Origin: Nageia nagi
Lineage: Eukaryota > Plantae > Pinophyta
Length of the DNA stretch: 64,000 bases
Direction of reading: 5' to 3'
Assembly: GCA_050084985.1 (NCBI GenBank)
Contig: JBITNC010000001.1
Span: forward strand, 72,478,001 to 72,542,000
The notes under the pieces were generated by a model. It saw only the letters and a list, made by a program, of their open reading frames with translations. It was not told the origin of the DNA and ran no database searches. Below, piece after piece: positions 1 through 45,128 of this stretch. Each line of letters starts with the position of its first letter. Within the stretch, counting starts at the first letter, position 1. Made by a program: the position numbers and the translations under genes.

Positions 1-1967
1 GACCATTAAATGAGAGAATGGTCACCTTTTGATGCAATAAGGGTTTCTTTTTCTCTTTTTTAGCCTCAACAACAGATGTATCCACAATATTCAAATATTT
101 ATCAAAAGAAACTGCTGCCAAATAAAACCTTCAGATTTATTACTATAAGCGCAAACCATTCATCTAATTCATCAATTACCTCATCTTCCTTCGATAAAGG
201 TGGTGGAACAAGAAACATAGGCTTGGATGGCCTAGGCAAGGGAGTGTGTGAGTTAGATGATGACACATTCCCAATGTTGTAGCCTCTCCTTTCTCCTTCC
301 CTCCTTGTACCATTTGTGTTTCCCAAAGCTGCCCTCAATTCTTGTTGATTTGTCTCTTGTAAGGACACCATTCTTTGTAGCATGTCAAGTAGAGCATCGA
401 ACTTTTGCTCATTCTCTTTTCTCCTAAATAGTTCCATGATCCGCTTTTAGCAAACATCAACCTTCAAAACCTTATTTGTGCAATTCCTGAAAAATAGGTC
501 AAAAATCATGGGAAATGCTAGATTTCATATAAAAAAATTCAACATTTTTTCTGAAGGTGGTAATGAGAAGTAGAGCTTAATGGGTGCTCAAATCTACCTG
601 ACAAATACCTCCAACTGATTGAATCTTCAAAAATGTCACTTCCTTTTTTGCTTGAAAAACCCTTTTAGAAGCTTAAAACAATATGCAAAGCACTCAAAAA
701 TGCTTCTAAGGGTCAGGTACTTGACTTGGCAGATTGAATCTGATGTTAAGAGTCCAAAATGCACCATAAATGACCCCTCAAAATAGGGTTTCCTGATATG
801 GACGAATTTGAGATTATTTTTTCTACAACCAATCAAATCACAAAAAAACCCTTAATCTGAAATTTCTAAAATCTTACCCAAATTTTTTTTGAAACCATAG
901 ATCTACAATTTGGCGAAAAGGGTATCCAAATCTACAATTTTTTTTTTTTTCACAAAAAAATCCCTAAAAATCCGCGATTTTCACTAAGCCATAAATTTTC
1001 ACCACAGAAAAACACTTTTCAACATGGATCTGAAATACCCACAAAAGTTTTTTGAAAGCACTAATTTGTTTGAAAACCCTAATTCAAAAAAACTACAAAA
1101 CTGAGATACCCACAACTGCCAAAACTCAGAAAAATAGACACTGACCACAGGCTGGCAAGATTCCAGCTTTGATACCACTGGTGATGTTCCTTTTATATAT
1201 ATATATATAAAATAAACTAAAAATATATATATTACACAGGTGAAGTTTCACAACCCTACGTAAACCAGAGATATTTGCCTAGCATATAAAAAATAAAATT
1301 GCTCATAAACTAAAATATATAAATATATATACATATATATATTAAATTTTAGCAAACCAACTAAAAACTGAGAATGGACAAATGCAGTCCCACAAAACTC
1401 AAAATTGATACAAACTTCCACAAGTTGGGAACGAACTGCAAACCCCAACTGAATATGGATACCAAAAAACTCCCACCTCAATAATGACACCCCAAATACA
1501 ATAAGCATAAGGTTTGGGGCTGCCAACAGGTCTGAAACACATGTCACAAACGCTCTAAAAATGCCATGAACCACTCATAGATGCATTTTTTGTATTTTTG
1601 ATATTTTAGGGCATCAACACCCTCAATGATATTGCCAAAACCTCAAACATGCAGCTCCAATGCACTATGGGAATAAGTAAGACCTGCAATCTCAACTCAT
1701 GGAAACTCTAGGGTTTCAATATTCAATTTTGATATCAACATAACATGCCCAAAATGGAACTTTCACTTCCTTTTATATATGAGGTTCTATTTTTGCATTG
1801 ACATTTCCAAAACCCTAAAATCACTTAAAGCCTTATTTCAAGTTTATAACATAAAGAAATAATAATTAAAACTAATGTTATGTCTCCTAATACATTGCTC
1901 CCTTTTTTTATTATTTATTTCCTAAGTGTAGAAGACAAAACTGATATTTCAATCTTGGGACATTATA
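1..1967 (-). mobile_element. 5' part of a Ty3/gypsy LTR retrotransposon (5' LTR, PBS, leader, ORF start); continues off the left edge
   Basis: LTR ~1180-1967 (ggtgatgttcc...gggacattata, decayed TG..CA). PBS gctttgatacca at 1166-1177 is the reverse complement of TGGTATCA(A)AGC. Leader ~440-1165 is homologous to the 9590-10548 leader of the PDS5-carrying element (e.g. cccctcaaaatagggtttcctgata). Confidence 0.85.
102..437 (-). pseudogene. gag-position ORF N-terminus (coiled-coil then G/S/P-rich segment)
   Basis: First ATG (context ggatcATGG) downstream of the PBS and leader; low-complexity gag-like composition; no diagnostic domain visible. Confidence 0.5.
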
Positions 1968-4900: not shown

Positions 4901-5254
4901 ATCATGAAATTCTTCAGAATGGGTCAATGTATAATCGTCCCCATACCTCTTCTAGCCAAAGGCTGCTTCAATTTAGGTAGGGGAAAAGTCCATGATCATG
5001 TTGCCTTTTGTATCCTATAGAACCCTTTTGCCATAATCACATTTCCTGGCCACTTCACTGCACAAGTTTGGGAAAGGTACTGCAATGGGCATCATGACGG
5101 CATTGAACAATTCGCATGTGTGGATTAGCTCCTCGGATAAGTCCAGGTTTCCCCAATCTGTATCACCAACGAAAATGTGTTGCCCCTTGAATCTGGCTTC
5201 AAGGAGCTCTATTTTTTCCTTTTGTTGGAAGTCTATCAGGCTTTCCTTCAAAAG
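1968..5254 (-). pseudogene. Long accessory ORF of a Tat/Ogre-like gypsy element, disrupted by stops; 5' part lies at 11304-11397 beyond the inserted element
   Basis: Chain of minus-strand ORF pieces (5015-5254, 4319-4555, 3911-4162, 3312-3581, 3099-3284, 2906-3157, 2519-2743, 2081-2341): globular aromatic N-half (…DFTYI…YGSEEQPLLLPRFASDRLIL…), S/E/D-rich acidic tract, basic tract, coiled-coil C-terminus. The reading frame joins across the AAAAG TSD (…QMTR|LLKES…). Confidence 0.6.
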
Positions 5255-5992
5255 TGTAATGTTCCTTTTATTTTTATTGCTCAAGTGAATGCTCAAAACA
5301 CAGAAATAAACTTGCAGCCAAGAACAATGTCAAAACTCAGAAAAATATGCAAAATAATGGAGAGAATCAGCCAAGGAATTTTATTAAAAAAAAAAATGAT
5401 GTCAAACCAATACAATATCTGAAGTGCCACAAATGTAGATCCAAGCTCACAAAAATGCCACAAATTGGCCAGATCTGAAAATGATGCAACAGAATGAGGC
5501 TAGGCTCCCATGCAAGGCCTCCAACCCTCAAGATCTCTCCAAGAAATCGCTACCTCCAACTCTAGATGTGCAAGCATCCCCAAGATTGAGGCCCACAACT
5601 CCTGAAGTCTCCCAAGCAATAGCTACCTTTAGCTCTAGGTGTACAAACACCCCCAAGACTAAGGCCCACAACCCTTGAGATCCAAATATGCATGAACACG
5701 TGCACACTTGGGTTGAGAAAGGAATCTCCTTCACTCAAAAATAATAAAATAGATGATCCACAAGCTTCCTCAAATGGGATGCCCACTTCCCTTTTATAAG
5801 TTCATATTCTAATTTGGAGTTGACATCTCCCAACCCTAAAATCACTTAAAGTGCCCTATTACAAAATAAAAATATAAAACATAAATAAACACAACTTAAG
5901 TTATGTCTCTTAATCACATGAACTCCTTTTTCACTTTTATAATTAAGTGTAGGAGACATTTACAAAAAAATATTTATTTTTGGTACATTACA
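5255..5992 (-). repeat. 3' LTR (738 bp)
   Basis: TG…CA termini; direct repeat of 10563-11298; abuts PPT agtccaccctcctc (reverse complement GAGGAGGGTGGACT). Confidence 0.97.
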
Positions 5993-6004
5993 AGTCCACC
6001 CTCC

Positions 6005-7431
6005 TCAAATTTGCTTGTCCTCAAGCAATTGCAATGTTGGATGGTTCACAATTTCATTAATACTGTACCCAAACTGTCTCAAACACTTATGTGTGTCAAA
6101 ACCCCATATTGTTTCTTTGTTACCAAGCCCATTTTGAATTCATAACAAGGCTGATTTTCTGATAACAGCATTAAAATCATGGTGTTTGTACTCCCAAAAC
6201 GTAGCCAAACTGAGTGATTCTCCATCCCTCATAGTTGTACTATGCATGAGCATCAACCAACCAACAATAATACTGATTGGGGTTTTGAGAAAGAGGCTGC
6301 AATGTAAGAGTAACAGGTCTAATTTTCTCTTTCCAATAGCCATAAATGACTCACAATCATCTACACTCATGCTTTCATTGTTTCTCATCAATGTGCCATG
6401 CATAAATGAAGTGTAGCTATAAATCATACCAAGAAAATAGAGACTGAAAATTGTATGTACAGCAGTATTATCATAGCCATATATCCATTTTACTTCCTCC
6501 CATATGACTTCTAAACCAAGCCGAACATTAAGAACTTCATTAGGAATGTTTTTCTTTACAACACTCAATAGACATGCCGTTTCCAATGGCCCCTCATGCT
6601 GTTGTAGTAACCTTGAATTGAATGTGCATACCATGGATGAATATCTTCATAATTTCATGTTCACTCTCAAGACAAATATGACTATGTGCTCCCACAACCG
6701 AGAATACACCTTCAAAACCAGCCAATGCAAAAAGTGTATAACTCAAATTCATGGCAAAATGAAAGTAAGTTACCTTCCCAAATGTGTGGAGGTTGGCATC
6801 ACCACAAGACACCAATTTCTGAAACTTACCAAGTTTCCTATCAACAAGTTCATCCAAATCATGCCTAAAAAGAAATAGTGCGCTGCTGTCATAAAAATCA
6901 GAATTCAACTTGTACCTGTTTAGAATGTTTCTGTGGATTCTCAAGTTCAAATTTATCTTCTTTTTCCTTCTATAACTGATTGAGGCACCTTTACATATGA
7001 AATTTTCTGATCTTACTTTTCCTAAGTTGATAAAATGAACACATGCAATTTTTCAACTCATGCGTAGCAGTCTCAAATCTTATTGCATCAAATATCATGC
7101 AATGTACAGCCATATTCATGTGAATTGCAGCCAAGCCATTTGTCATCAGAATAGTCCAAAACATCTTGCAAAGTGGAGTACAAAACATGAAGGAAGATGT
7201 ACTAATGTTTTGACAACAAGTATATATAAAACTTGCCTTTGTGCATGCCCAAAGAAACACAAATCAAATCAGTTTCCTGTGTAACTTTTGCAATCTCAAA
7301 ACTGTATGCCATCTTATGCATGTCAATAATCAAATACCAACTTGAAATCCTCCAATGTAGTGTGCTCCAAATCAAACCTGAATTGAAGATGTACAAGGGC
7401 TCCAAAGTGTGCTCAAGAGTTTTCACAAGTG
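6005..7431 (-). pseudogene. Distal part of the chimeric polyprotein (unassigned mosaic) ending in a chromovirus pol C-terminal tail
   Basis: Overlapping frameshifted ORF pieces (7202-7447, 6991-7260, 6594-6950, 6140-6634). The 6634 frame continues past TGA 6140-6142 to …EIVNHPTLQLLEDKQI* (stop 6005-6007), matching the pol tail at 13855-13905 (EILAH…LLEDKQF). Confidence 0.6.
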
Positions 7432-8772
7432 CTATGAACAAATGCAATCAAGGCTGCCTAAGTGCTTCTTCAAGACCCATGAAGTGCTCAAAGTGTCTTC
7501 CAACTCCAACAATCTAAAAATGAAATGATTAGTTTCCCATCTATAACTGTTACACATTCTCAAAATTAAATCAAAAATCATCAAGACAAAATTATGAACC
7601 AATGTATGCCAAGGTTCAACAAGAAGTGCAACCCATTCATCCCATTTGTCTTTCAAACCATGTTCCAAGTATGTGCAAGTGTCCCAATAAAGTGTGGAAT
7701 CAGTCCCCTTTTTGCTATTCCAAAACTTCATCAACAAGGCAACTATAATCCCTTGAATTCTTTCAATTATGATACTTTTTTGCTGGCTATCCCAACTGTC
7801 TAAATAGCTGAGAATGTCATGTCGAATTGTGAGGTGACAAGTGTACCAATTGTCCACATTTCCTATTGTAATTTTTCTGATTTCTTTATCAGATTCATAG
7901 GTTGCCATCAAGTGAGAATTTTGTGCAATTCTTTCCACATATAAGGCTCCAAAAAACAACTCCAAATACGAAAACAGAATCAACAATGTGTATACCAATG
8001 AAAGCCATAAAAAGAGATGGAAAGATACCACATATGACCATGAAAAAGTATCTCTCTCTTTAATGTTCCATGTCGGGTGTGTTCTACACATTCTATCATG
8101 CATCCACATGAGAAAAATCAGCATTTTATTTGAAGGAACCATGGCTGTAGTAAATTTACCTTCACATGAAATATCAAAGAGTTGTCCTCCTCCCATGTAC
8201 TTGTATGAAACTTCCAAAATTTTGCATGCAACTTTGGATGTGTTTTCCTTGATTCCTTGTAGCACTATACTCTTGCCATCTAGTACAAATTTTAATTCCA
8301 ATTTTTGATAATTGGTAGAATAATCACTAAGAGACCAAAGCCATTGGACTCCCAAAACCATATGAGGCACACCACCCAATGGAAAAACAAAGAATTGCTC
8401 ATCACTCTCATAGTTTCCAAAGCTGATTTTTATATCCTTTACTACTTTATTGCGAGGAATGAGATCACCAAAGGACTCAATTTGGAAATCTCTTTTAACT
8501 CCATTCAAACTGTCACTAACTGAAAATTCTCCAATGCAATTATTATGTTCTTCATTGATTTCATTCCCAACAAGTGTACAAAATGAAGTATTTTGGGACT
8601 TTTTGAAACATACCTCATGTGAAAGAGTGACATCTCTATTACCAATCTCTTGAATGTAATCAGCCATGCAAGATGAACCATGCTCCAATGTTGAAATGTC
8701 TTCATTATGTTCTCCTTCAAAATTTTCTATTTGGCCTTCTTCTTTTTCAGTGGTGGAAACAACTTCAGAATT
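7432..8772 (-). pseudogene. In-frame continuation of the PDS5 ORF: acidic linker, C-terminal half of a gypsy aspartic protease, unassigned region with a hydrophobic stretch
   Basis: Same frame as 9585 (9585-8688=897). KDIKISFGNYESDEQFFVFPLGGVPHMVLGVQWLWSL…NYQKLELKF is the RVP_2-type 'VLGxxWL' half of the protease; the catalytic D(S/T)G motif is absent. Confidence 0.75.
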
Positions 8773-9585
8773 TTATGCACAAATTACCTCAAGCTCTTCT
8801 TTTTGATGGACAATTTCAATTTTTTCCATATTTTCCAAAGCTGATTCATCAACATAGTCCTTATCATTAAGGGAAAAATCTGTAGAATCATCCTTAGACC
8901 CTTCATTTCCAAAGAAGCATTTCAACTTCTTTTCACACTGTTTTACAACACTATCAACCAAATAATGGGCAGCTGCAGTAGTAATCAAATTTCTCCTCCA
9001 AACATCCAATAACATGGACAAGAGTGGTTGGTAAATATAATCACCTTCATTTATAATCAAGACCATAATATCTCTCATGGCTGAAATGACATTATTAGCA
9101 TGCTTTTGTCTTGCTGATGCAATGAAGTGATGAAACATTTGGTAGATTAATTCATCCATTCCCAAATCTAACAAAAGATTTCCCATTCTAGTTTTTGCAA
9201 ATATTTCAAGTAGAGAAACCCTTCTAGCAAAATGAGAAATTGAAACATTTCCTAAACCCTCAAAACTATCAACCAACAGCTGAAATATTGCTCTCAATGT
9301 GTTGTCATCATAAGGAGTTCTAGGTGCATAAATTTGCAATATTTTACACAAAAATGAAGCAACCATAATTCTTACCTCCTTATCCTTGTGGTTCAACCAT
9401 TTCGCCTTGCCTAATGATTTTACCACTGGAATTAAATCTGCATGTGGCTCATCCATCATATGCAGACAATCCCTTACTTCTTCTAAGATGCAAATAAAAG
9501 CATCTTTTGGTTGAAAGAGAATTCTCAGTTTTTCACTGGCATAATTGAGCCTTTTAATCACCTCTTTTTTGCCAACTAGTGCCAT
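8773..9585 (-). CDS. PDS5-like: Retrotransposon-captured PDS5 (sister chromatid cohesion protein) N-terminal HEAT/ARM domain, intronless, 270 aa
   Basis: WLNHKDKEVRIMVAS…IYAPRTPYDDNTLRAIFQLLVDSFEGL…FARRVSLLEIFAKTR…LLDLGMDELIYQMF…VISAMRDIMVLIINE…AAHYLVDSVVKQCEKKL is collinear with the plant PDS5 N-terminus as recalled (LNHQDKDVKLLVAS…TAPEAPYSD…IFQLIVSAFAGL…FGRRVLILETVAKYR…MLDLECDDL…SSMQNIM…AARRLAMKVIEHC). Confidence 0.9.
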   Translation of the reverse strand: MALVGKKEVIKRLNYASEKLRILFQPKDAFICILEEVRDCLHMMDEPHADLIPVVKSLGKAKWLNHKDKEVRIMVASFLCKILQIYAPRTPYDDNTLRAIFQLLVDSFEGLGNVSISHFARRVSLLEIFAKTRMGNLLLDLGMDELIYQMFHHFIASARQKHANNVISAMRDIMVLIINEGDYIYQPLLSMLLDVWRRNLITTAAAHYLVDSVVKQCEKKLKCFFGNEGSKDDSTDFSLNDKDYVDESALENMEKIEIVHQKEELEVICA

Positions 9586-10548
9586 GATCCACCATTAACC
9601 AATTCAACCCCCAAAAACCTTTGCTTCAACCAGATCCCAAACCACAAAACCTAGATAGTCCAAAACTGAAAAACTCTACAATAATTTTGCAAACCCTATT
9701 TCTGCAATTTAATTTCTGAAAATTGGTAAAAAATCATAGGAAATGCTAGATCTCATACCAAACATTTTTGTAGAATTTTTTTGAGGGTAGCAATGCAAAG
9801 TAAGGCTTAATGGGTATTCAAATCCACCCCACAAATGCTTTCACATGCTAGAATATTTAAAAACGTCACTTTTCTTTTTTTCCTCAAAAGGACCCTTCTA
9901 GAAGCTTAAAATTGCATACAAAGTGCTCAAAAATACCCCTTAGGGTTAGATGTTTGGCTTAGTATGCTGGATCTGATGCTGGAACTCCAAAATTAGCCTC
10001 AAATGGCCCCTCAAAATAGGGTTTCCTGATACCCACGAAATTAGGGTTTCTTTTTGCAACCAAACAAATTACCAAGAATCTGCAATACCCAAAATGATTT
10101 TCACTATGAAATTGGCAACCCTAATTTTGAAAAACTTTGAAACTGAGATACCCACAACTGAAAAACACTGAAAAAATGCTAGATCTGAAAATATCCACAA
10201 AAAATTTTTTTTACTCAAAACTCCAATTCTGCCTAGAATCCTTGAGCAAAATTTTTCTGACTAGCTAGAATAATAGATCAAGACTTTCTATTTTTGAAAA
10301 TAGCTTTCAATCCTGCAATTCTTATCTCTCAACCCTAGACGACTTAGTCTAGGAATGCAAATTTTCTTTAAAAAATGCCTTTTAACCTTGAAAATTGCTT
10401 TTAAAATGCAAACCTCCTTGATCTATTAGATCCCCCAAAAATATTCAACACCCAAATGCTAGAAATTGAAGATCTGAATTTTTTGCAGAAACATTAACTC
10501 CAAATCTTTGAAAAATGTTCGATCTAACCACAGGTTGGCAAGATCCAA

Positions 10549-10560
10549 GCTCTGATACTA
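10549..10560 (-). other. Primer binding site (initiator tRNA-Met)
   Basis: gctctgatacta is the reverse complement of TAGTATCAGAGC (one mismatch to TGGTATCAGAGC), 2 bp from the LTR. Confidence 0.9.
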
Positions 10561-10562
10561 CT

Positions 10563-11298
10563 TGTAATGTTCCTTTTATTTTATTGCTCAAGTGAATGCT
10601 CAAAACATAGAAATAAACTTGTAGCCAAGGAACAATGTCAAAACTCAGAAAAATATGCAAAATAATGGAGAGAATCAGCCAAGGAATTTTATTAAAAAAA
10701 AATGATGTCAAACCAATACAATAGCTGAAGTGCCACAAATGCAGATCCAAGCTCACAAAAATGCCACAAATTGGCCAGATTTGAAAATGATGCAACAGAA
10801 TGAGGCTAGGCTCCCATGCAAGGTCTCCAACCGTCAAGATCTCTCCAAGAAATCGCTACCTCCAACTCTAGATGTGCAAGCATCCCCAAGATTGAGGCCC
10901 ACAACTCCTGAAGTCTCCCAAGCAATAGCTACCTTTAGCTCTAGGTGTACAAACACCCCCAAGACTAAGGCCCACAACCCTTGAGATCCAAATATGCATG
11001 AACACGTGCACACTTAGGTTGAGAAAGAACTCTCCTTCACTCAAAAATAATAAAATAGATGATCCACAAGCTTCCTCAAATGGGATGCCCACTTCCCTTT
11101 TATAAGCTCATATTCTAATTTGGAGTTGACATCTCCCAACCCTAAAATCACTTAAAGTGCCCTATTACAAAATAAAAATATAAAACATAAATAAACACAA
11201 CTTAAGTTATGTCTCCTAGTCACATGAACTCCTTTTTCACTTTTATAATTAAGTGTAGGAGACATTTACAAAAAAATATTTATTTTTGGTACATTACA
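10563..11298 (-). repeat. 5' LTR (736 bp) with minus-strand TATA (cccttttataag, 11095-11106)
   Basis: Direct repeat of 5255-5992; followed by the AAAAG TSD. Confidence 0.97.
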
Positions 11299-11303
11299 AA
11301 AAG

Positions 11304-13186
11304 CCTAGTCATCTGGCTTTTGGTTACATGCCTTTTCGAACAACTGGCTCTGAATTTTGCTAGATTTCAATGAAGGAGCTTTGATGTTTGAAGCCATGGA
11401 GAATTCTACTTAAGCTCTTGTCAAACCCAAACGTCTAACCAATCTAGGCGCATAGTTCTGGATGAGTACAAAAGCATAGCTTGAAAAGTATGCGATTGGG
11501 CCTAGGGTCACTTAGTCAATTTTCGAACACAATTCTTCATTCCAGATCTGTTCGCATGGTTTTGAATGAGTGCCTCAAGTAATACCTTGAAGGTATGCGA
11601 TTGGGTTTAGGGGTTGATATGAAATGCCTTATCCAAAAAAGGCTAACTGAATGTGCAACATCCCTAAATCCTCCTTTCCTCCTTGGTCGTATGTTTTAGA
11701 GTGAGTGCCCAGGCATGTAAGAGAAATGGTGCAATTGGGTTCAGAAATGAATATGCAATGTTTCTCAGTGGTCTTCTTTCCTTGGTTGCATGTTTTGAAA
11801 TGAGTGCCCAAGCAAGCAAGAGAAATGATGTGACTAAGAAGAGGGGTGATTCTGGAATGATGTTTAAAATACTCAAAAAGGGGGTGATATTTATAGGTTT
11901 TGTGTAGTTTCCAGGTGTCACTTCCTTATTGGCCCATCTAAGGGTCAAATAGAAGGCCCACAATAAGGTCACATGTTTCTTGGAGTGTGCAAAAGGACGG
12001 GGTGAAAATGATGCGACTGGGAGAGGGGGGTGACTTGGCCAAATTTCAGACTGATTTTGAAGCCTTAGCCCTTAGTTGCATCCTTTTAGATGGGTGCCTA
12101 AAGCACATGCTTAAATCTTTGCGCCTGAGTCCTGGCACACTTCCCAAGGCCTAGGACCTAAAAAACTTCAAAAAAAGTGCAAGTAGTCTTTGGTCGCATG
12201 CCTAGGAAGGGATCCTTTTTCTCCTATTCTCCCATGCTTTGCTCCTTGTCAAATTTGCAAACTGAAATGAAGGGGGCTGATTTCCCTTTATAGCCCTCCA
12301 AGTGGGACACATGTCACCATGAGATAGGTGTAGAAAGAGGTCCAATGCATGGGCTCCCAATTGTCAACAAGGCTCAATACTTAGTCAATTTTCCTCTCTT
12401 CCCTCAGTCAATTTTCCTCTCTTCCCTCTAGTCGCATGGTTTTGGACGAGTGCAAAAGGACTCATCTAGATCCTTGTGACAACGTTTGAGGCTCCAAAAT
12501 TTGACTGGACGAGTGCAAAAGGACTCATCTAGATCCTTGCGACAACGTTTGAGGCTCTAAAATTTGACTAAGTGTAGAATCTCCTTTGTTGCATGGTTTT
12601 TGGTAAGTGCTAAAAGGACTCATCTCAAAGCATGTGACAATGAAAAAAAAATGCTAAGTATGAGTTGCCACCTTGGTTGCACCCTTTTGAAGGGGTGCAA
12701 AAAGGACTCCATGAAATGCATGCAACAACAAAATTCACTTAAAAAATGTGAAGTGTGAGATGATGTCCAGCCTAGTCGCACCTTCCTAGAAGGTGCAAAA
12801 GCACTCCATCGAAAACATGTGACAAGCTGAAAATGGGTGTTTCCTTTGCTTTTTCGACAGAAAAAACAACATATGAGATGCAAATGGGGTTCCTACAACA
12901 TGGGGGCCCTCAGGATGCTTTTGAATATGATGATGCAAATGACAAAAACAAGGAAGGCTGACTGGTCGCATGGCTTAAGAGGGGTGCAAAAGCACTCATT
13001 GAAAAACATGCGACATAATGAAAAATGCAAGATTTTGACTTCAACTACCATGAAAATCTAGTTTAAACACGTTCCTAAGACTAGACCGAAAGATGTGCAT
13101 CTTCTTGGACAAATTTTCCTAGAATTCCTCTTTTGCTTTCTTGAGGGTCCTCAAAATGTGAAAAATTTGGGGGGGGGGTTTCTATA
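11304..13186 (-). mobile_element. Start of the accessory ORF (ATG ~11397) and upstream promoter/LTR-like region of the host Tat/Ogre-like element
   Basis: Minus-strand TATA (ccctttatagccc, ~12284-12296); dispersed gtcgcatg/tgcgac motifs; tandem duplications (~24 bp x2 at ~12381-12426, ~63 bp x2 at ~12443-12569); ends in a G11 run plus tttctata (possible decayed LTR end or PPT). Confidence 0.5.
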
Positions 13187-24553: not shown

Positions 24554-27014
24554 ATGCATGACATTCCAAGTTGTTAAGTTGTAGCTTTGATGAAGACATT
24601 CCTAGCCATTAAGTGTCAACCATGGCAAGGACTCAATAGTTCGTCAAGAGTCCTCCATGATGATTGATGACTTTACCTATCTGGCAATGAACCCATGTTT
24701 GATGATGACGATACTATCATGAATCATCCTTGGAGTGAGAGGATAGGAGATAGGAGAAAAGTGAGATCTATAACATTATTGTTGTGTGTGTATGCACTGC
24801 AACAGTCCTCTTCACAGAGATACATAGCTACAATTTGTTGTGCGAGAGGGACTATACCCTGCTATACATCTCTACATAGAGACTTCGTTGTAACACATAT
24901 TAGTATATTTAATTGAGTATTCAAACTTGTATCCCTGTCTCAGTTATGGATTCTTGCTTGTAGTTTGTTGCTTCACAACTCGGTAGGGGTTTAACTCTTA
25001 ATAGAAAGGTTTAACTCTTAGTACATCAGTATTCCATATTGAAGGTTTTCACTTTAGGTCCACTAATTTGAATTATAACAGAACCAACACAAATTGTAAA
25101 TGAAATGGGTATAGAACATGATGTTAATGTTTCAGCAACTCATTGTTTAGGCCTAGATTGTGTCAGTTCATGTTCCTCTTGTGCAGCTACATATCAAATC
25201 CGATGGAGGACATTATTCCCCATTTTGATGGTTCAAGCTATGTGGACAAATTGGATGCTTGAATTTGGTGTCTGGAGGTGTTCTTTAAGATGTTGAATTC
25301 TTTGGAGACACAAACATTATCATTGTTGAGGTTCATATAGATGATCAAGCCATGGCCTTCTGGCAATCTTGTATTGAACATTGGGGACAAGAAACCCAAC
25401 ATTAAGAGTTGGAAGGGCTCTAAGAGGCTATTAGGAAGTGATGTTGTCTGCTGAAGTATACAAATGAGCTATTGTCATGATGGTTTAAGTCAATTGCTTG
25501 CTCATCTGGCTAGCTGTTCAAGATATTGAGGTCCTTCATATGAAATTCTGGCTGAAGCCTATTTTCTAAACTCCACAAGGAGTTGGAGCTCTCAATCATC
25601 AATCTTTGGAGAAGTATTTTGAACTTGTTTTATTGGTGAAGTAGAAGAAGGGACCTCAAAAATGAAACCAATCTTTTGTTTCCCAAAAGGAGAAGACACC
25701 ACGCATGATTTACACCTACTAGTTCCTCTAACTTTTCCTCAAAGAATCAGGATTTTTTATTAAAGTATCTAATTAAGAGCTAAGGATAGTAATATTGTGC
25801 TTATCAAAAGCAATCTTTGAAGATTGTGTTGAAGAATGTGTTTTTCAATATAAGAAGACAAAATACCTTTAGCAGAGCAACAATCATAGGAAAAAGATTG
25901 TAATGTTTCACTTTTTGGGGTCCCTTTCATGAGCATTTAATCACAAAGCTATTTTACCTCATCTTGTGGGATGTCCCTCCTTTAGGAGAAATTCTGTGTA
26001 TTTCGAGCATTTTATTGTATTTTGATGTATTTACGCCATTTTATGGCTTCCTGACGATGATGAGCATTCATCTTGAGTGCAAAAATGCTAACATTGAGCA
26101 CTTAAGGTTGGAAGTCCCTCTTCTGGGGGTTGAGTGATTTTTAGTAACTAGGATTATTTAATTAATTGCTAAAGTGTAGCGGGCCATTATCCACCATTAG
26201 ATACTAAATTTGTAATTATTGATCTCATCCTATGCTCCTAAAATAGGACATCTCACATGTGGGACTTAATGAAATCTTAAAATGTAATTTGGTGGGCCCG
26301 ATAGGTTAAAATTAGGTTAACGCCTCATTTTGGAGTGTAATTAATAATTTGTAACCCTAATGAGGAACTAGAATGTCTAGGTTGGGTCAACCAACCTCTT
26401 GGATGAGACACCTCCTATAAAAGGCTATTAGAGTCTCATTTGAAGGTTATGCTTGATTAATCATTATTTTGTGGGCGTGAGCTCTCCATTCCTCTTGTGC
26501 ACGCAGGGGAGGTACTTAAGGTCTAACATTCCAAAAGACTTATTCGACTGCCATCTCCTTAGGGTGTGGCATTCCCCTTGGTTGTTCAACTACCACGAAC
26601 ACAACTACTATGGAGTCCTGAATCCATCAAGGATTCACTCCATCACCACTATTGTGGAGTCTTGGAATCCATTAGGGATTCACTCCTTCAACACTACTGT
26701 AGAGTCCAAGAATCCATCAGGGATTCACTCCACCATTGCTGTTGAGATCCATCTAGGATCTACATTTCTACTGCAGAGACCTAACACTACTAGGGTTCGT
26801 CCACCTTGAAGAGGTTGTTTGGATCTCAACATGTAATCCAATCTCCTAGAGAGGATGTTTACGCTCGGAGTCATTCTGAGTCATCTTTCACTAATAGATT
26901 TGCATCCAAAGAGCTAGTCACATATAGATCCATATCCAGATTCCAGAGGAGCCAACATTAGATCGTACAACTTCTAGAGCCAGTTGGGGTCATTCAAGGT
27001 TCTTGAGTCGAGAT

Positions 27015-27743
27015 TGTAATGTTCCTTTTATTTTTATTGCTCAAGTGAATGCTCAAAACACAAAAATAAACTTGCAACCAAGGAACAATGTCAAAACTTA
27101 GAAAAATATGCAAAATAATGGAGAGAATCAGCCAAGGAATTTATTAAAAAAAATGATGTCAAACCAATACAATAGCTGAAGTGCCACAAATGCAGATCCA
27201 AGCTCACAAAAATGCCACAAATTGGCCAGATCTGAAAATGATGCAACAGAATGAGGCTAGGCTCCCATGCAAGGCCTCCAACCCTCAGATCTCTCCAAGA
27301 AATCGCTACCTCCAACTCTAGATGTGCAAGCATCCCCAAGATTGAGGCCCACAACTCCTGAAGTCTCCAAGCAATAGCTACCTTTAGCTCTAGGTGTACA
27401 AACACCTCCAAGACTAAGGCCCACAACCCTTGAGATCCAAATATGCATGAACAGTGCACACTTGGGTTGAGAAGGAATCTCCTTCACTCAAAATAATAAA
27501 ATAGATGATCCACAAGCTCCCTCAAATGGGATGCCCACTTCCCTTTCATAAGCTCTATTCTAATTTGGAGTTGACATCTCCCAACCCTAAAATCACTTAA
27601 AGTGCCCTATTACAAAATAAAAATATAAAACATAAATAAACACAACTTAAGTTATGTCTCCTAGTCACATGAACTCCTTTTTCACTTTTATAATTAAGTG
27701 TAGGAGACATTTACAAAAAAATATTTATTTTTGGTACATTACA
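27015..27743 (-). mobile_element. Solo LTR of the PDS5-carrying family
   Basis: Near-identical to 5255-5992 and 10563-11298; TSD GAGAT (27010-27014 and 27744-27748). Confidence 0.97.
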
Positions 27744-27852
27744 GAGATCCAGTCTCCTTGGTTGAGACATGTCATTCTAAGGCATCTTCATTGCTCTTTG
27801 AGTCTTGTAACTCATTTCTCTTGGCCCATTTCATTAATTTGTATTTGAGATC

Positions 27853-41560: not shown

Positions 41561-44559
41561 TAAGAAGGTTAAGGGGTTTATTATCGATCATGTAAAGGGT
41601 GCTTATGTGATGGTAATTTTAGGGTTTATGGCTTTTATTTTGAGGAGTTTTCTCAAGACTAAGAGGATTTTTGATCGTTTTATGATTGATTAAATTAAAC
41701 TTAAGAAAATGAACTTTGTGGTGAAGTTAATTTACTCATGGCATTGAAGAGTACTCTATGTTTCATGCAACACCCTTTCAACATATTCATTTTGTGCAAT
41801 ACATCTCTCTTCAAAACTTCAAATTGAAACCTACTTTTCAATCTAATGTTAAAAGGCTAAGGGAAATTTATATGGCTATGGAATCAATAGGTTCTATGGG
41901 TGAAAAGGTTGTAGAAGGCATTGAAGGACCTTGATTTGGGAAATCATAAGGATTTAGTTTTTCTTGAATATAATGAGTATATAAGAGCATTTAAGTAATT
42001 GTATTTTACTATTATTGGAAAATATTTTTCGTTAGCTTACTTCTTTTAATAGATATCAACAACCAAGTCTAAATTCCCTGATATGGTGTTAACATTCTTA
42101 TTTGCAAGTTACAACTCTCAACTTTCATGCTACTATTTTCCTCCAAAATAAGATTTGTAGTAATGAGGTGGATCAAAAGTTCCATGCTAAATTTTCCCAC
42201 ATTATTCTTAATAAATTCCAACACTATATAAGTAATTATATTTATATTCTCATTTGGATCTCTACTAGAGTTTTTTTCTTTACAACGAACATGTTATGGA
42301 TAGTTTATATTGTACTTAGATCGTTGTTAAAGTGCAAAAGGGTCTTTTGCATGAGCTTTATCTGTTCTAGTTCTATGATTTATTTTAGATATCTTAAGTG
42401 ATATGTAAAGAAAATGGGTGGAAACTAGAAACATATTTGACCTCAACTTGTGTTGTTTTGTAAGCTTAGAATATCCTTAACATTTGAAATATTCTATTTG
42501 TTAAAATCTTAGACATAATTTTTTATATAAATAAAATGGATAGCTTACATTATTTTCTTGGTGACTAATCATGAAGTTAGAGACATAGTTTAGGAACTAT
42601 CTATTGGTATAGAATTTCAAGTTCTAACTACCAACAATTTCTTTATTATTATCAACCATTATGGAATTTTGTGAGAACTCTTGTCCACTATGACCAAACA
42701 TACAATTTTTTTTTGTATAAATTATTTTGAAAATACATAAAAGATCATATATAAAATTTTCAAGAAAACATAAGATAATTATAAACTTTCATGACAAATT
42801 TGGATCCTAGTGAATGCTAATGTTAATATGGGTTGAAGTATTCTGATCTTGACTATCATTTCATTTTGTGCATATTTTTGTTCTTTTTCTTTAAATTTAG
42901 GGAGTACGAAATATTTTTCTTTAGTTTTATAAGATGATAAAAGTTTATTCAACAAGAATAAATTTTTAGGCTTCATTGTTATTGTCCCTTTGCAGCCAAA
43001 GCAAAGTTGAAATGTGATGAGCTATTCTAGGGTCACTCCTCAAACATGCCCTAGGAGAGGGATGTTTGGCTTTTAGCTTTGAAATTACTCCAAACAAGCT
43101 CAATCATGCATAAAATATCAAATGACTTGCTATGAAAGGAAAATATGAATTTTAACTTGCAAAAATACCTCCAAAAACCAATGTTTAGCTATGATGAGCA
43201 AATATAAAAATAACACAAGCAAATGCCTCTAGAATTCCAATGACTCAATCAGGGAGCAAAACCAAAAAGCAAACAATGCAAACACCACTCCAGATCCAAC
43301 ATCCAAGCACAAGAAGATAAATTTCAAGATATTGATAGCAAAATGTAATTGTATTGATTACATAATGATGGAAGTGCAAATACAAATATTTATGTCTACC
43401 TAAGGAGCTTTCACCAAGACTTCCTCTAATAGGCTTATATCAGATGGAACCAAGGCATCACCAATCCTAAAAGTGGTGAGGTGCAAACTATGTATTCTTT
43501 GCAAAAACTATAATGGAACCAACAATGTTCCTCTCAAGATGGCTTGAATAAGTTAAGGTTAGCCTTCTCTCATCTCAATACCTCAAATGTAGGTTTCCCT
43601 ACAAGTGGCAAAGATAGAGCTTCAAGTCAATTCAAAAATGGGTTTAATAATAATAATCATCATATCTCATAATGACTACAAGTCCTTCTTTTATTGGCAA
43701 GGGTGATCATGTTCTAATCTCACATTGAGATGATCCAATAATGAAGTGATGTGATTTGTGTGCTCATGTATGCAACATACAAGATGAGGATCCTTGGGAT
43801 GGATGAAATCACATCTAAGGGTTAGGAATGCCAACATATAAGAGGGGGTGATGTTGAAGTGCCTTGTGATTACTACCATAGGTCCAAGTACCAAGAAGGG
43901 CCAACATGGGATCTTAGGATGCTCACATGCCTAATGTCAATGCTAGGAAGCTGTCCACTTATCTTGAGATTACCAATGTCTAGTTTGAACACACCTAACC
44001 TTAGAGCTCCAAATGACCTCATAGTTAGTGCAATAACCTAAGTGGATGCTCTACCTTGAAGAGGGGAGCACTAATGACTAGAGATGCTTTAAATGCCAAT
44101 ATTACAATCATCAAGGCTAAAATATACAACACCTTATGTAAGGAGACTGATATTGTATTTATAAATATAATTACCTTGGTATTACAAATACATTATTATT
44201 GGAATTTAGTAAATAACTAAATACAAAACTTAAATAAATAAAAGGGTTATTTATTCCATAATTAGAGCTTTGCTAAGTATCTAAGTGGAATTTACATCAT
44301 TTTAGCCAATTTCTATCAAATTATACCAAATCGTACCTAAATTAATATTCCCATTTATCAAAGGTGAAATGGGGATAACATTTTAAAAAATGGACATTAC
44401 AAGTCTGCCCTCCTCAAATTACTTATCCCCAAGCAATTAGAAAAATCCACTCCTGCAGTAGAGTCTTCTTAGTTGATCCAAGAATTCACAAACTCTAGCT
44501 TCTTTTTTGGTGTAGCGCTCATGTGTTATCCATGCCCAAGCTGAATAAATTTGATGATG

Positions 44560-45128
44560 ATCTTTTCCCCTTTGAAAAAGAAGCTCATATCATATAATTG
44601 AAAATTAGTTTTAATGTTGCCTTAGGGATACATCCATTGAACTCTAAGTGTTACCTCTTATGAGTTATCTTGGGGGAGGACATAAAATTCTTCCTCAAGG
44701 ACATAGTTCCCTATATTGATATCAAGTCTTATTGATCGATCATATAATGTATAGTACTCATTAGCATTGGAGACATAGAATTCATTTATCATCTTCATTG
44801 GGAGGTTATTTCTTACTACAAACCATAGGTTAATAAAGCTTTGGGTGACTCCATTATCAACCAAAATGGAAACTTCCTCTCCTATTATCACTCCTCCAAT
44901 TCTAATAGAATAATAGTGTGGAACCAAGTGACCTACCATCATCCTTACATCTGAAATGATCCTTGAATAAGGATGACCTTTCTTTAATGGAGGGTGATGT
45001 TGTGGTGTCCTATTTTCATTATGTGCAATTAATTTCTTTTGAGAGTATACATGTACCTGTTCCCTTTGATAATTAGGATATGCCTCTCTTAGTGGTTTCA
45101 CATCCAATACTTCTTCTCCCTTAGTCAC
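44560..45128 (-). pseudogene. Gypsy aspartic protease remnant
   Basis: SIRIGGVIIGEEVSILVDNGVTQSFIN…INIGNYVLEEEFYVLP…LRVQW; no RT follows before the PPT. Confidence 0.8.

What the first reader, a model, noticed from the sequence alone, without database searches (positions are those of the whole stretch)
5255..11298. Mobile LTR retrotransposon with a captured cohesin-regulator (PDS5) HEAT domain in place of gag
Seen: a complete element (near-identical LTRs, AAAAG TSD, PBS, PPT) whose first ORF after the leader is a 270-codon intronless PDS5 N-terminal domain, with no gag, RT or intact integrase. Known: plant PDS5 genes are multi-intron here, so this points to mRNA-level capture. The PDS5 N-terminus is the docking module for cohesin release and establishment factors. 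Inference: the domain is far more diverged from typical PDS5 than the two LTRs are from each other, yet it is still open. Capture is therefore old and the family has propagated with the ORF intact. It could be a selected element-encoded chromatin/cohesin modulator (targeting tether, decoy or anti-silencing factor) or a source of PDS5-directed siRNAs. I do not know of a described PDS5-carrying retrotransposon family.
Basis: partly seen in the sequence, partly recalled or inferred. Interest (0 to 1): 0.95.

Follow-up and report, generated by a model that had tools for sequence, protein, structure and literature searches.

The report
Jumping element carrying a PDS5 domain
A defective, helper-dependent plant retrotransposon in a gymnosperm genome long ago swapped the front of its capsid (gag) gene for the protein-docking head of a PDS5C-type cohesin/DNA-methylation factor and then multiplied; the structure is real and old, but whether the stolen domain does anything is unproven.

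Summary
Window 5255-11298 is a complete minus-strand LTR retrotransposon. It has 738/736-nt LTRs (K2P 0.018), an AAAAG target duplication, a tRNA-iMet-type PBS and a PPT. Its first ORF (9585-8773) is an uninterrupted PDS5 N-terminal HEAT domain (Pfam E 5e-43; confident model, best fold match PDS5B).

New points:
- The donor was a gymnosperm PDS5C-class gene (short PDS5 head plus Tudor reader; Arabidopsis PDS5C is the RdDM factor RDM15).
- The domain replaces gag from gag's own start codon. It joins in frame to a 19-codon gag tail and a dead protease remnant.
- The stop after codon 270 is private to this copy. In four other sequencing runs that codon is a sense codon, so the family ORF runs on for at least 717 codons.
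- A 27%-diverged, decayed copy from a metagenome shares both junctions, so there was one old capture.
- Against that copy the domain shows modest coding constraint (second codon positions 35 differences vs 64 expected; stops 1 vs 6.7).
- The family is repeated: a solo LTR in this window, contigs in 13 studies, and seven more first-reader notes of PDS5 elements elsewhere in this genome.

No function, expression or binding is shown. The siRNA idea is unlikely. TE gene capture is already known to be common in gymnosperms.

The parts
5250..5254 (.). Target-site duplication AAAAG (left flank)
   Evidence: Read directly from the sequence. Identical to 11299-11303.
5255..5992 (-). 3' LTR in element orientation, 738 nt, TG...CA
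   Evidence: Direct repeat of 10563-11298: 13 substitutions and 4 gap columns, K2P 0.018.
5995..6006 (-). Polypurine tract GAGGAGGGTGGA, two bases from the 3' LTR
   Evidence: Read from the sequence.
6143..7447 (-). Domain-less 3' internal region: four overlapping open pieces in shifting frames (81, 90, 152 and 168 codons)
   Evidence: Frame map. No Pfam hit. The last piece is 58-78% identical to family-specific ORFs P0160-P0162. P0153 reads across the frame shift near 7435.
7435..8772 (-). 446-codon stop-free frame in the same frame as the PDS5 ORF; holds an inactive protease remnant at 8227-8469
   Evidence: 85% identical to gag-bearing P0152 and 43% to P0154. Protease C-terminal half matches gag-PR-RT protein P0155 at E 1.4e-10. 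No D[ST]G motif.
8773..8775 (-). Stop codon TAA ending the 270-codon ORF; private to this copy
   Evidence: All four runs laid read another letter at 8775, which makes this a sense codon in their copies (table 3). P0152 has a sense codon here.
8776..8832 (-). Gag tail (ENMEKIEIVHQKEELEVICA) kept downstream of the 3' junction of the capture
   Evidence: Homology to gag-bearing P0152 begins at window 8832, P0152 residue 218. The same junction is present in L001.
8833..9585 (-). Captured PDS5C-class N-terminal HEAT domain plus acidic linker (codons 1-251), starting at the gag start codon
   Evidence: Pfam PF20168 E 4.8e-43. PDB 5HDT and 5FRP by sequence. AlphaFold2 pLDDT 85.6 and Foldseek best hits PDS5B and Pds5. 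Tree places it in the gymnosperm PDS5C-class clade. Start context GGATCATGG is shared with the sister gag.
9586..10548 (-). 963-nt leader, about 75% identical to the leader of the gag-bearing sister element at 438-1180
   Evidence: Seven upstream ATGs.
10549..10560 (-). Primer-binding site TAGTATCAGAGC (tRNA-iMet type, one mismatch)
   Evidence: Read from the sequence. The sister has TGGTATCAAAGC at the same place.
10563..11298 (-). 5' LTR in element orientation, 736 nt
11299..11303 (.). Target-site duplication AAAAG (right flank)
27015..27743 (-). Solo LTR of the same family with its own target duplication GAGAT (27010-27014 and 27744-27748): a second, independent insertion
   Evidence: K2P 0.020-0.021 to both LTRs of the element. 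Flanks read directly.
2..1937 (-). Gag-bearing sister element, cut by the window start: gag N-terminus 437-2, homologous leader, PBS, part of the LTR
   Evidence: P0152 residues 1-96 are 94% identical to 437-150. Leader and LTR similarity.

Best explanation
This is one roughly 1%-decayed copy of a repeated, non-autonomous (helper-dependent) LTR retrotransposon family derived from a Ty3/gypsy element in a gymnosperm.

In one ancient event, the first ~217 codons of the element's gag were replaced by the first ~251 codons of a spliced PDS5C-class mRNA. That piece covers the whole short HEAT head and lacks the disordered middle and the H3K4me1-reading Tudor domain. The most economical route (inferred) is two template switches by reverse transcriptase on a co-packaged host mRNA. 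One switch was at or next to the start codon, whose context GGATCATGG is shared. The other was inside the linker, and it kept the reading frame.

The product is a PDS5N / gag-tail / dead-protease fusion ORF of at least 717 codons in the family. In this copy it is cut to 270 codons by a private stop.

The element keeps everything needed in cis (LTRs, PBS, leader, PPT). It has no gag core, active protease, RT or integrase, so autonomous relatives must copy it in trans (inferred).

During its long history the PDS5 module evolved as coding sequence under weak to moderate constraint that preserves the helical fold but not the host's invariant docking residues. I read this as selection at the level of the element for a translated, folded N-terminal module. 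My most likely guess for its action (inferred, untested) is a partner-binding decoy of PDS5C/RDM15-type proteins that cannot read chromatin.
For: - Structure of the element.
- PDS5 identity and fold.
- PDS5C-class origin: the nearest full-length relatives are Ginkgo Gb_09525 and a Welwitschia transcript (38-39% identity). Both have a PDS5 head of ~230 positions plus a Tudor domain. The window ORF with P0001-P0003 forms a clade (SH-aLRT 99) nested in the gymnosperm short-PDS5 clade.
- Gag replacement: P0152 carries gag residues 1-217, then matches the window at 85% from 8832 onward. A sister gag sits in the window behind a homologous leader with the same start context.
- Single old capture: L001 shares the leader piece, the start codon and the 3' junction at 73% identity, and has three frame-breaking deletions.
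- Coding constraint against L001, compared with a base-specific neutral simulation: amino-acid differences 101 vs 121 +/- 7.6 (P 0.005); stops 1 vs 6.7 (P 0.007); second-position differences 35 vs 64 (0 of 20,000 simulations). The two out-of-frame controls are not significant.
- Private stop and family read-through.
- Repetition: a 2,423-nt contig at 99% identity spans leader, PDS5 and protease remnant in a 64-Mb run. Contigs occur in runs under at least 8 organism labels and 13 studies. There is a solo LTR with its own target duplication. The scan holds seven other first-reader notes of PDS5 elements in this genome (unchecked).
Against: - The constraint signal rests on one pair of DNA copies and is modest.
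- The coding part is not more conserved than the aligned flanks (73% vs 72% and 66% identity).
- Standard dN/dS (0.32-0.35) is inflated by composition: an out-of-frame control gave 0.42 by NG86.
- Sites conserved in host PDS5 are only weakly the ones conserved among element copies (Spearman 0.18, P 0.014; Mann-Whitney P 0.19). About 41% of near-invariant host residues are replaced, including APEAP to APRTP.
- A trans-acting decoy would benefit broken copies too, so selection on each lineage is hard to explain.
- No RNA, protein or binding evidence: all runs laid were contigs, and their RNA/DNA nature was only a guess.
- Neither the host donor gene nor the helper element was seen.
Confidence: 0.55

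Rival explanations
1. Neutral passenger. The PDS5 piece was picked up by accident and has no effect on element or host. It is open here only because the burst that made this copy was recent and the master copy happened to be intact.
For: - This copy's differences from the other runs are mostly amino-acid changing and include a stop. Of the seven variant sites listed across the ORF and its stop codon, four change an amino acid, one makes the stop and two are silent.
- L001, P0001, P0002 and P0003 are all truncated or frame-shifted.
- The docking loop and many host-invariant residues have drifted.
- The coding region is no better conserved than its flanks.
- Captured fragments are very common in gymnosperm TEs (PMC13477047).
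Against: - Second-codon-position differences are half the neutral expectation, with 1 stop against 6.7 expected over 240 codons, while out-of-frame controls behave neutrally.
- The in-frame junction lies exactly at the gag start codon, and the frame continues for 717 or more codons in the family.
- The model is still a confident HEAT fold.
Confidence: 0.32
2. Source of small RNAs against the host PDS5C gene. Silencing of the element would spill over onto the donor gene, giving an epigenetic conflict of the kind described in maize.
For: The principle is documented for captured fragments in maize (bioRxiv 10.1101/777037) and discussed for gymnosperms (PMC13477047). The element is repeated and therefore probably a siRNA target.
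Against: The closest full-length host-type proteins are only 38-39% identical. No full-length protein above about 40% identity appeared among 1.84 billion cluster representatives. Runs of 21-24 identical bases are therefore very unlikely today. The idea also does not explain the coding-type substitution pattern.
Confidence: 0.04
3. Host exaptation. One or a few copies are domesticated as a short PDS5C-like host gene, and the constraint comes from host-level selection.
For: Short PDS5C-like ORFs of 178-337 aa are annotated as genes in Cryptomeria and Taxus. The gymnosperm clade holds many short, fast-evolving members.
Against: This copy sits inside intact LTRs with a target duplication, is broken by a private stop, and belongs to a repeated family. 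The compared copy L001 is itself decayed and element-borne. No syntenic or single-copy evidence was obtained.
Confidence: 0.05
4. A processed PDS5 pseudogene that merely landed inside an older element (nested insertion), not a recombinational capture.
For: The segment has no introns across about 250 codons of homology.
Against: There is no poly(A) tract and no target duplication at its ends. The 5' end coincides with the gag start codon and the 3' end is in frame with the gag tail. A 27%-diverged copy has the same junctions, and the whole unit was copied with its LTRs.
Confidence: 0.02

Closest known systems
Bs1 of maize (LTR retroelement with transduced host gene fragments forming a gag-fused chimeric ORF)
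   Same: Non-autonomous LTR element. It carries intron-free pieces of host genes inside the internal region, read as one hybrid ORF with gag sequence, and is copied by helpers (as reviewed in PMC13317346).
   Different: Bs1 carries pieces of three metabolic or cell-wall genes behind gag and, from my own knowledge, is present in very few copies. Here a single chromatin-factor domain replaces gag from its start codon, the family appears to be high-copy, and the capture is shared by lineages 27% apart.
Genome-wide TE capture of gene fragments in gymnosperms (Platycladus orientalis comparative study, PMC13477047)
   Same: [quoted passage not shown] Captures are older and more intense in conifers than in angiosperms.
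   Different: The main text of that survey does not mention PDS5 or cohesin. It treats captures statistically. It does not describe an in-frame replacement of gag or a test of constraint between element-borne copies.
Plant PDS5C class / RDM15 (AT4G31880)
   Same: Same short N-terminal PDS5 HEAT/ARM head of about 230 residues. The window ORF nests in the gymnosperm branch of this class.
   Different: The disordered middle and the C-terminal Tudor H3K4me1 reader are missing. The APEAP-type loop has changed, and 41% of near-invariant host residues are replaced. It is element-borne, not a host gene.
Replication-defective acute transforming retroviruses (gag-onc fusions); analogy only
   Same: A cellular mRNA fragment is recombined into a retroelement during reverse transcription, replaces structural genes, is expressed as a fusion from the gag start, and depends on a helper.
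   Different: Those are infectious animal viruses selected through cell proliferation. Here there is a plant retrotransposon inherited through the germ line, with no evidence of any cellular effect.
VANC anti-silencing proteins of VANDAL (Mutator-like) transposons (cited in PMC13317346)
   Same: A possible functional analogy: a TE-encoded protein that counters silencing of its own family.
   Different: VANC is not a captured host silencing factor. It belongs to DNA transposons and its activity has been shown experimentally. Nothing of the kind is shown here.

Membership tests
LTR retrotransposon | Two long direct terminal repeats ending TG...CA | tested here: met
   738 and 736 nt, K2P 0.018, both TGTAATG...ACATTACA.
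LTR retrotransposon | Short target-site duplication flanking the element | tested here: met
   AAAAG on both sides. The solo LTR has GAGAT on both sides.
LTR retrotransposon | tRNA primer-binding site next to the 5' LTR and polypurine tract next to the 3' LTR | tested here: met
   TAGTATCAGAGC lies two bases after the 5' LTR, with one mismatch to the tRNA-iMet 12-mer (that 12-mer is recalled from my own knowledge). GAGGAGGGTGGA lies two bases before the 3' LTR.
Autonomous Ty3/gypsy element | Intact gag, protease with D[ST]G, RT, RNase H and integrase | tested here: not met
   Only a 19-codon gag tail and an 81-residue protease C-terminal remnant are present. There is no D[ST]G motif and no RT or integrase hit. 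The Ty3/gypsy origin is inferred from the best protease match, P0155, which carries RVT_1 and RVP_2-type domains.
PDS5 (Pfam PF20168) | Significant match to the PDS5 profile and a HEAT-repeat fold | tested here: met
   147.6 bits against a cut-off of 27, but only profile positions 3-202 of 1053. Fold matches 5HDT and 5FRP.
PDS5 (cohesin regulator proper) | Conserved A-P-[D/E]-A-P loop that docks WAPL/Sororin-type motifs (PDB 5HDT is PDS5B bound to a Wapl peptide; the loop's docking role is recalled from my own knowledge) | tested here: not met
   The window has APRTP where PDS5B has APEAP (alignment). Element-borne relatives have SLEAP, SLKVP, IPKAP and others.
Plant PDS5C class | Short PDS5 head (200-300 aa) grouping with PDS5C-type proteins | tested here: met
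   Nested in a clade with Ginkgo (924 aa) and Welwitschia (901 aa) head-plus-Tudor proteins, SH-aLRT 91. This was a quick tree with LG+G4.
Plant PDS5C class | C-terminal Tudor (H3K4me1 reader) domain | tested here: not met
   No Tudor hit in any frame of the element. Homology to host proteins ends near residue 251-267.
LTR element with captured host gene (Bs1-like) | Host-derived coding segment without introns inside the internal region, copied together with the LTRs | tested here: met
   About 250 uninterrupted codons. The same segment with the same junctions occurs in L001 and in contigs of four runs. Intron positions of the donor gene in this genome were not available.
LTR element with captured host gene (Bs1-like) | Transcription or translation of the chimeric ORF | not testable with these tools
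   All runs laid were assembled contigs of uncertain RNA/DNA nature. The single read-laying run is used.
TE-encoded anti-silencing factor | Expression of the protein lowers methylation or silencing of its own family | not testable with these tools
   No experiment or methylome data were available. The idea rests only on the role of PDS5C/RDM15 in RdDM (PMC8184781).

The most novel reading that the evidence does not exclude
The family encodes a dominant-negative fragment of a silencing-linked chromatin factor. The protein-docking head of PDS5C/RDM15, without its Tudor chromatin reader, is made from the gag start codon. It would soak up partners of the host protein (cohesin or RdDM components) and blunt silencing, which would have helped a gag-less, pol-less element reach a high copy number in a gymnosperm giga-genome.
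Probability: 0.1. Interest if true: 0.85.

Novelty: new member of a known kind. Interest (0 to 1): 0.5.

Why it matters
If the domain is only a passenger, this is a clean, datable textbook case of how retrotransposons shuffle and multiply host protein modules in conifer-type genomes. It also explains the many short 'PDS5 homolog C-like' or hypothetical genes annotated in Cryptomeria and Taxus, which may be element cargo rather than genes. If the domain is kept because it works, it would be a retrotransposon that turned a piece of the host's own chromatin and DNA-methylation machinery against that machinery. No such case is documented for LTR elements. It would bear on why gymnosperm genomes fail to curb their retrotransposons.

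Tried and rejected
The DNA around P0001, P0002, P0152-P0154 and Taxus P0157 could therefore not be fetched, and only one second DNA copy (L001) was available.
- The search for related loci with the 14-sequence alignment failed for lack of a conserved stretch. The 4-sequence alignment found one locus.
- Plain dN/dS (NG86 0.32, YN00 0.35) was set aside as evidence, because an out-of-frame control gave 0.42 by NG86. It was replaced by a base-specific neutral simulation with frame controls.
- A per-site test asked whether host-conserved columns are the ones conserved among element copies. The result was weak.
- Pfam at E up to 10, the ESM Atlas and a third homology search on the downstream frames found no known domain and no host gene, including no sign of ATG2, which another scan note reports for a different copy.
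- The apparent extension of the third LTR into the PPT was a chance match. It is a solo LTR.
- A reading in which 72 nt of host 5'UTR were captured was dropped. The start context GGATCATGG is shared with the sister gag, and the extra 72 nt resemble leader sequence. It cannot be excluded.
- Copy number from k-mer depth is only an order-of-magnitude guess, because the tool warns that depth is not copy number.
- Complex prediction was not used, because no partner from this genome was in hand and I do not claim binding.
Read-through across the stop was not searched as one protein; the pieces were searched apart.

Full report
**Observation**

The window holds a complete LTR retrotransposon at exactly the coordinates given, lying on the minus strand.
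- The LTRs are 5255-5992 and 10563-11298 (738 and 736 nt). Both begin TGTAATG and end ACATTACA. They differ by 13 substitutions and 4 gap columns (K2P 0.018).
- AAAAG flanks both ends.
- Two bases inside the 5' LTR lies TAGTATCAGAGC. This is one mismatch from the tRNA-iMet primer site that I know from the plant retrotransposon literature.
- Two bases inside the 3' LTR lies the purine run GAGGAGGGTGGA.
- At the conifer rate of 2.2e-9 per site per year (a figure from my own knowledge) the insertion is about 4 My old. At the grass rate it is about 0.7 My old.

**The ORF**

After a 963-nt leader, the first long ORF is 9585-8773 (270 codons).
- It matches Pfam PDS5 at E 4.8e-43, but only profile positions 3-202 of 1053.
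- It matches human PDS5B (5HDT) and yeast Pds5 (5FRP) directly.
- With a 36-sequence alignment it gives a confident all-helical model: pLDDT 85.6, above 90 for most of residues 1-225, and disordered from about 230.
- The best structural matches of that model are again PDS5B and Pds5.
- The identification as a PDS5 N-terminal HEAT module is therefore secure.

**Which PDS5**

A search of 1.84 billion cluster representatives found 1,033 relatives.
- The closest full-length relatives are gymnosperm proteins of about 900 aa (Ginkgo Gb_09525 and a Welwitschia transcript) at 38-39% identity.
- These proteins have a PDS5 head of only about 230 profile positions plus a C-terminal Tudor domain. This is the plant 'PDS5C class'.
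- A recent preprint dates that class to seed plants and links it to RNA-directed DNA methylation (bioRxiv 10.1101/2025.05.08.652912).
- Arabidopsis PDS5C is RDM15 (AT4G31880). It has an N-terminal ARM/HEAT repeat for protein contacts and a Tudor domain that reads H3K4me1, and it interacts with the Pol V subunit NRPE3B (PMC8184781).
- In a tree of 144 N-terminal domains, the window ORF groups with three short ORFs from Logan and JGI contigs (P0001-P0003, 56-59% identical; SH-aLRT 99). That group sits inside the gymnosperm short-PDS5 clade, on long branches.
- The cargo is therefore the complete docking head of a PDS5C-type protein, without its disordered middle and without its chromatin reader.

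**How it sits in the element**

Translation of the minus strand shows that the PDS5 ORF and the next 446 codons (8772-7435) are one frame broken by a single stop.
- The downstream frame finds a 624-aa ORF on a Logan contig (P0152, 85% identical). P0152 starts with a normal gag of about 217 residues and then matches the window from 8832 onward.
- The last ~19 codons of the '270-codon ORF' (ENMEKIEIVHQKEELEVICA) are therefore a gag tail. PDS5 codons 1-251 stand where gag codons 1-217 stand in the sister.
- A copy of that sister gag lies in this window at 437-2, behind a leader that is about 75% identical to the leader of the PDS5 element.
- Both start codons, and that of L001, sit in the same nine bases, GGATCATGG. 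The 5' junction is therefore at or very near the gag start codon.
- Further downstream, 8469-8227 matches the C-terminal half of the protease of a genuine gag-PR-RT protein (P0155, E 1.4e-10). There is no D[ST]G motif, and no RT or integrase.
- The element is thus a defective derivative that must be copied by helpers. That last step is inferred.

**The stop is private**

Contigs of four public runs (four organism labels) were laid on 5299-11298.
- In all four, the base at 8775 differs from the window in a way that makes codon 271 a sense codon (table 3).
- Among the listed variant sites in the PDS5 part, the window differs from these runs at four amino-acid-changing sites and two silent ones. 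Five of the six are seen in at least three of the runs. In the next frame, thirteen of fifteen listed differences change the amino acid. This is what neutral decay after insertion looks like.
- I built no consensus. This is a comparison of copies only.
- The family-level product is therefore a fusion of PDS5 head, gag tail and dead protease of at least 717 codons.
- In this copy, open pieces in shifting frames continue to 6143. P0153 reads across the shift near 7435.

**One old capture**

The only second DNA copy I could obtain, L001 (a 6.7-kb JGI metagenome contig), aligns from the leader through the start codon, across the PDS5 segment and past the 3' junction into the gag tail.
- Identity is 73% in the coding part.
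- L001 has three frame-breaking deletions.
- Shared junctions at both ends mean one capture event that predates this split. The split is about 15-20 times deeper than the LTR-LTR divergence.

**Is the domain kept by selection?**

Naive dN/dS is 0.32-0.35, but an out-of-frame control gave 0.42 by NG86, so I did not rely on it. Instead I simulated neutral change with the base-specific substitution matrix estimated from the same columns.

| Measure over 240 codons | Observed | Neutral simulation | P |
|---|---|---|---|
| Amino-acid differences | 101 | 121 +/- 7.6 | 0.005 |
| Stops | 1 | 6.7 | 0.007 |
| Second-position differences | 35 | 64 | 0 of 20,000 simulations |

- The +1 and +2 frames behave neutrally (z -0.7 and +1.4).
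- The segment therefore evolved as coding sequence for a good part of its history.
- The constraint is weak. The coding part is no better conserved than the aligned flanks.
- Host-conserved columns are only weakly the ones conserved among element copies (Spearman 0.18).
- About 41% of near-invariant host residues are replaced.
- The APEAP docking loop of PDS5B (the entry 5HDT holds PDS5B with a Wapl peptide) reads APRTP here. It reads SLEAP, SLKVP or IPKAP in relatives.
- The fold seems preserved. The canonical docking surface does not.

**Spread**

- A solo LTR of the same family with its own duplication GAGAT lies at 27015-27743.
- The PDS5 stretch is held by 20 runs from 13 studies under at least eight organism labels, plus air metagenomes.
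- A 64-Mb run contains a 2,423-nt contig at 99% identity that links leader, PDS5 and protease remnant.
- If these are unbiased shotgun runs of a genome of 10 Gb or more, the depths imply thousands of copies. The tool warns that depth is not copy number, so this is only an order of magnitude.
- The scan's own notebook lists seven further first-reader notes of PDS5-carrying LTR elements elsewhere in this genome among about 293 windows. These notes are unchecked.

**Mechanism and rivals**

- The best-supported account is a helper-dependent Ty3/gypsy derivative. It acquired the 5' part of a spliced PDS5C-class mRNA by template switching during reverse transcription, in frame at the gag start. It has since propagated with this module as a translated, folded but fast-evolving domain.
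- What the module does is unknown. My preferred guess is a decoy for partners of PDS5C/RDM15-type proteins that lacks chromatin targeting. I give that specific idea about 10%.
- The main rival is a neutral passenger, at about one third.
- siRNA cross-talk with the donor gene is unlikely at 38-39% protein identity.
- A nested processed pseudogene is excluded by the junctions and by the absence of an A-tail.

**Comparison with what is known**

- LTR elements with captured gene pieces are known from Bs1 in maize and from rice and sorghum surveys (PMC13317346, PMC3726574).
- A 2026 comparative study reports that capture is widespread and older in gymnosperms (PMC13477047). Its main text does not mention PDS5.
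- Full-text searches for PDS5 together with retrotransposon and capture terms found nothing relevant.
- I therefore file this as a new member of a known kind. Three features are notable: the donor is linked to silencing, the swap is exact at the gag start codon, and the capture is old and has been multiplied many times.

**Limits**

- All laid runs were contigs, so expression could not be judged.
- The host donor gene and the helper element were not seen.
- The downstream domain-less frame stays open in relatives down to 43% identity and remains unexplained.

Noticed in passing
window 27015-27743: Solo LTR of the same family (K2P about 0.02 to both LTRs of the element) with its own 5-bp target duplication GAGAT. 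This is an independent insertion later reduced by LTR-LTR recombination.
   Followed up: yes
window 2-1937 (minus strand): Gag-bearing sister element cut by the window start. Its gag N-terminus (437-2) is 94% identical to P0152, its leader is about 75% identical to that of the PDS5 element, its PBS is TGGTATCAAAGC, and its start-codon context GGATCATGG is the same.
   Followed up: partly
window 6143-8772 (minus strand): A long frame without any recognisable domain stays free of stops in this copy (446 codons) and in relatives from 85% down to 43% identity (P0152-P0154, P0160-P0162). The ESM Atlas rates it as not protein-like. Why it stays open is unexplained.
   Followed up: partly
proteins P0005, P0006, P0007, P0012, P0016, P0018, P0022, P0058, P0100, P0118, P0157 (Cryptomeria japonica, Taxus chinensis): Many short (178-337 aa), fast-evolving 'hypothetical' or 'PDS5 homolog C-like' proteins are annotated in other conifers. 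One Taxus protein (P0157, 845 aa) has a PDS5 head followed by a long domain-less tail. These may be element cargo rather than host genes.
   Followed up: partly
window 5515-5603 / 5589-5675 and 10836-10909 / 10911-10981: Each LTR contains an internal direct repeat of about 75-90 nt at about 80% identity.
   Followed up: no
window 12443-12568: Two tandem 63-bp units at 97% identity, just outside the element.
   Followed up: no
window 44484-44939 (minus) and 53687-53992 (plus): Other Ty3/gypsy scraps: a protease-like piece (26-31% to P0155, P0152 and the element's own frame) and an RT-like piece (39% to P0155).
   Followed up: no
whole window: Only six ORFs of 140 aa or more occur in 64 kb, and the two longest are inside this element. 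G+C drops from about 0.37 in the first half to about 0.30 in the second half.
   Followed up: no
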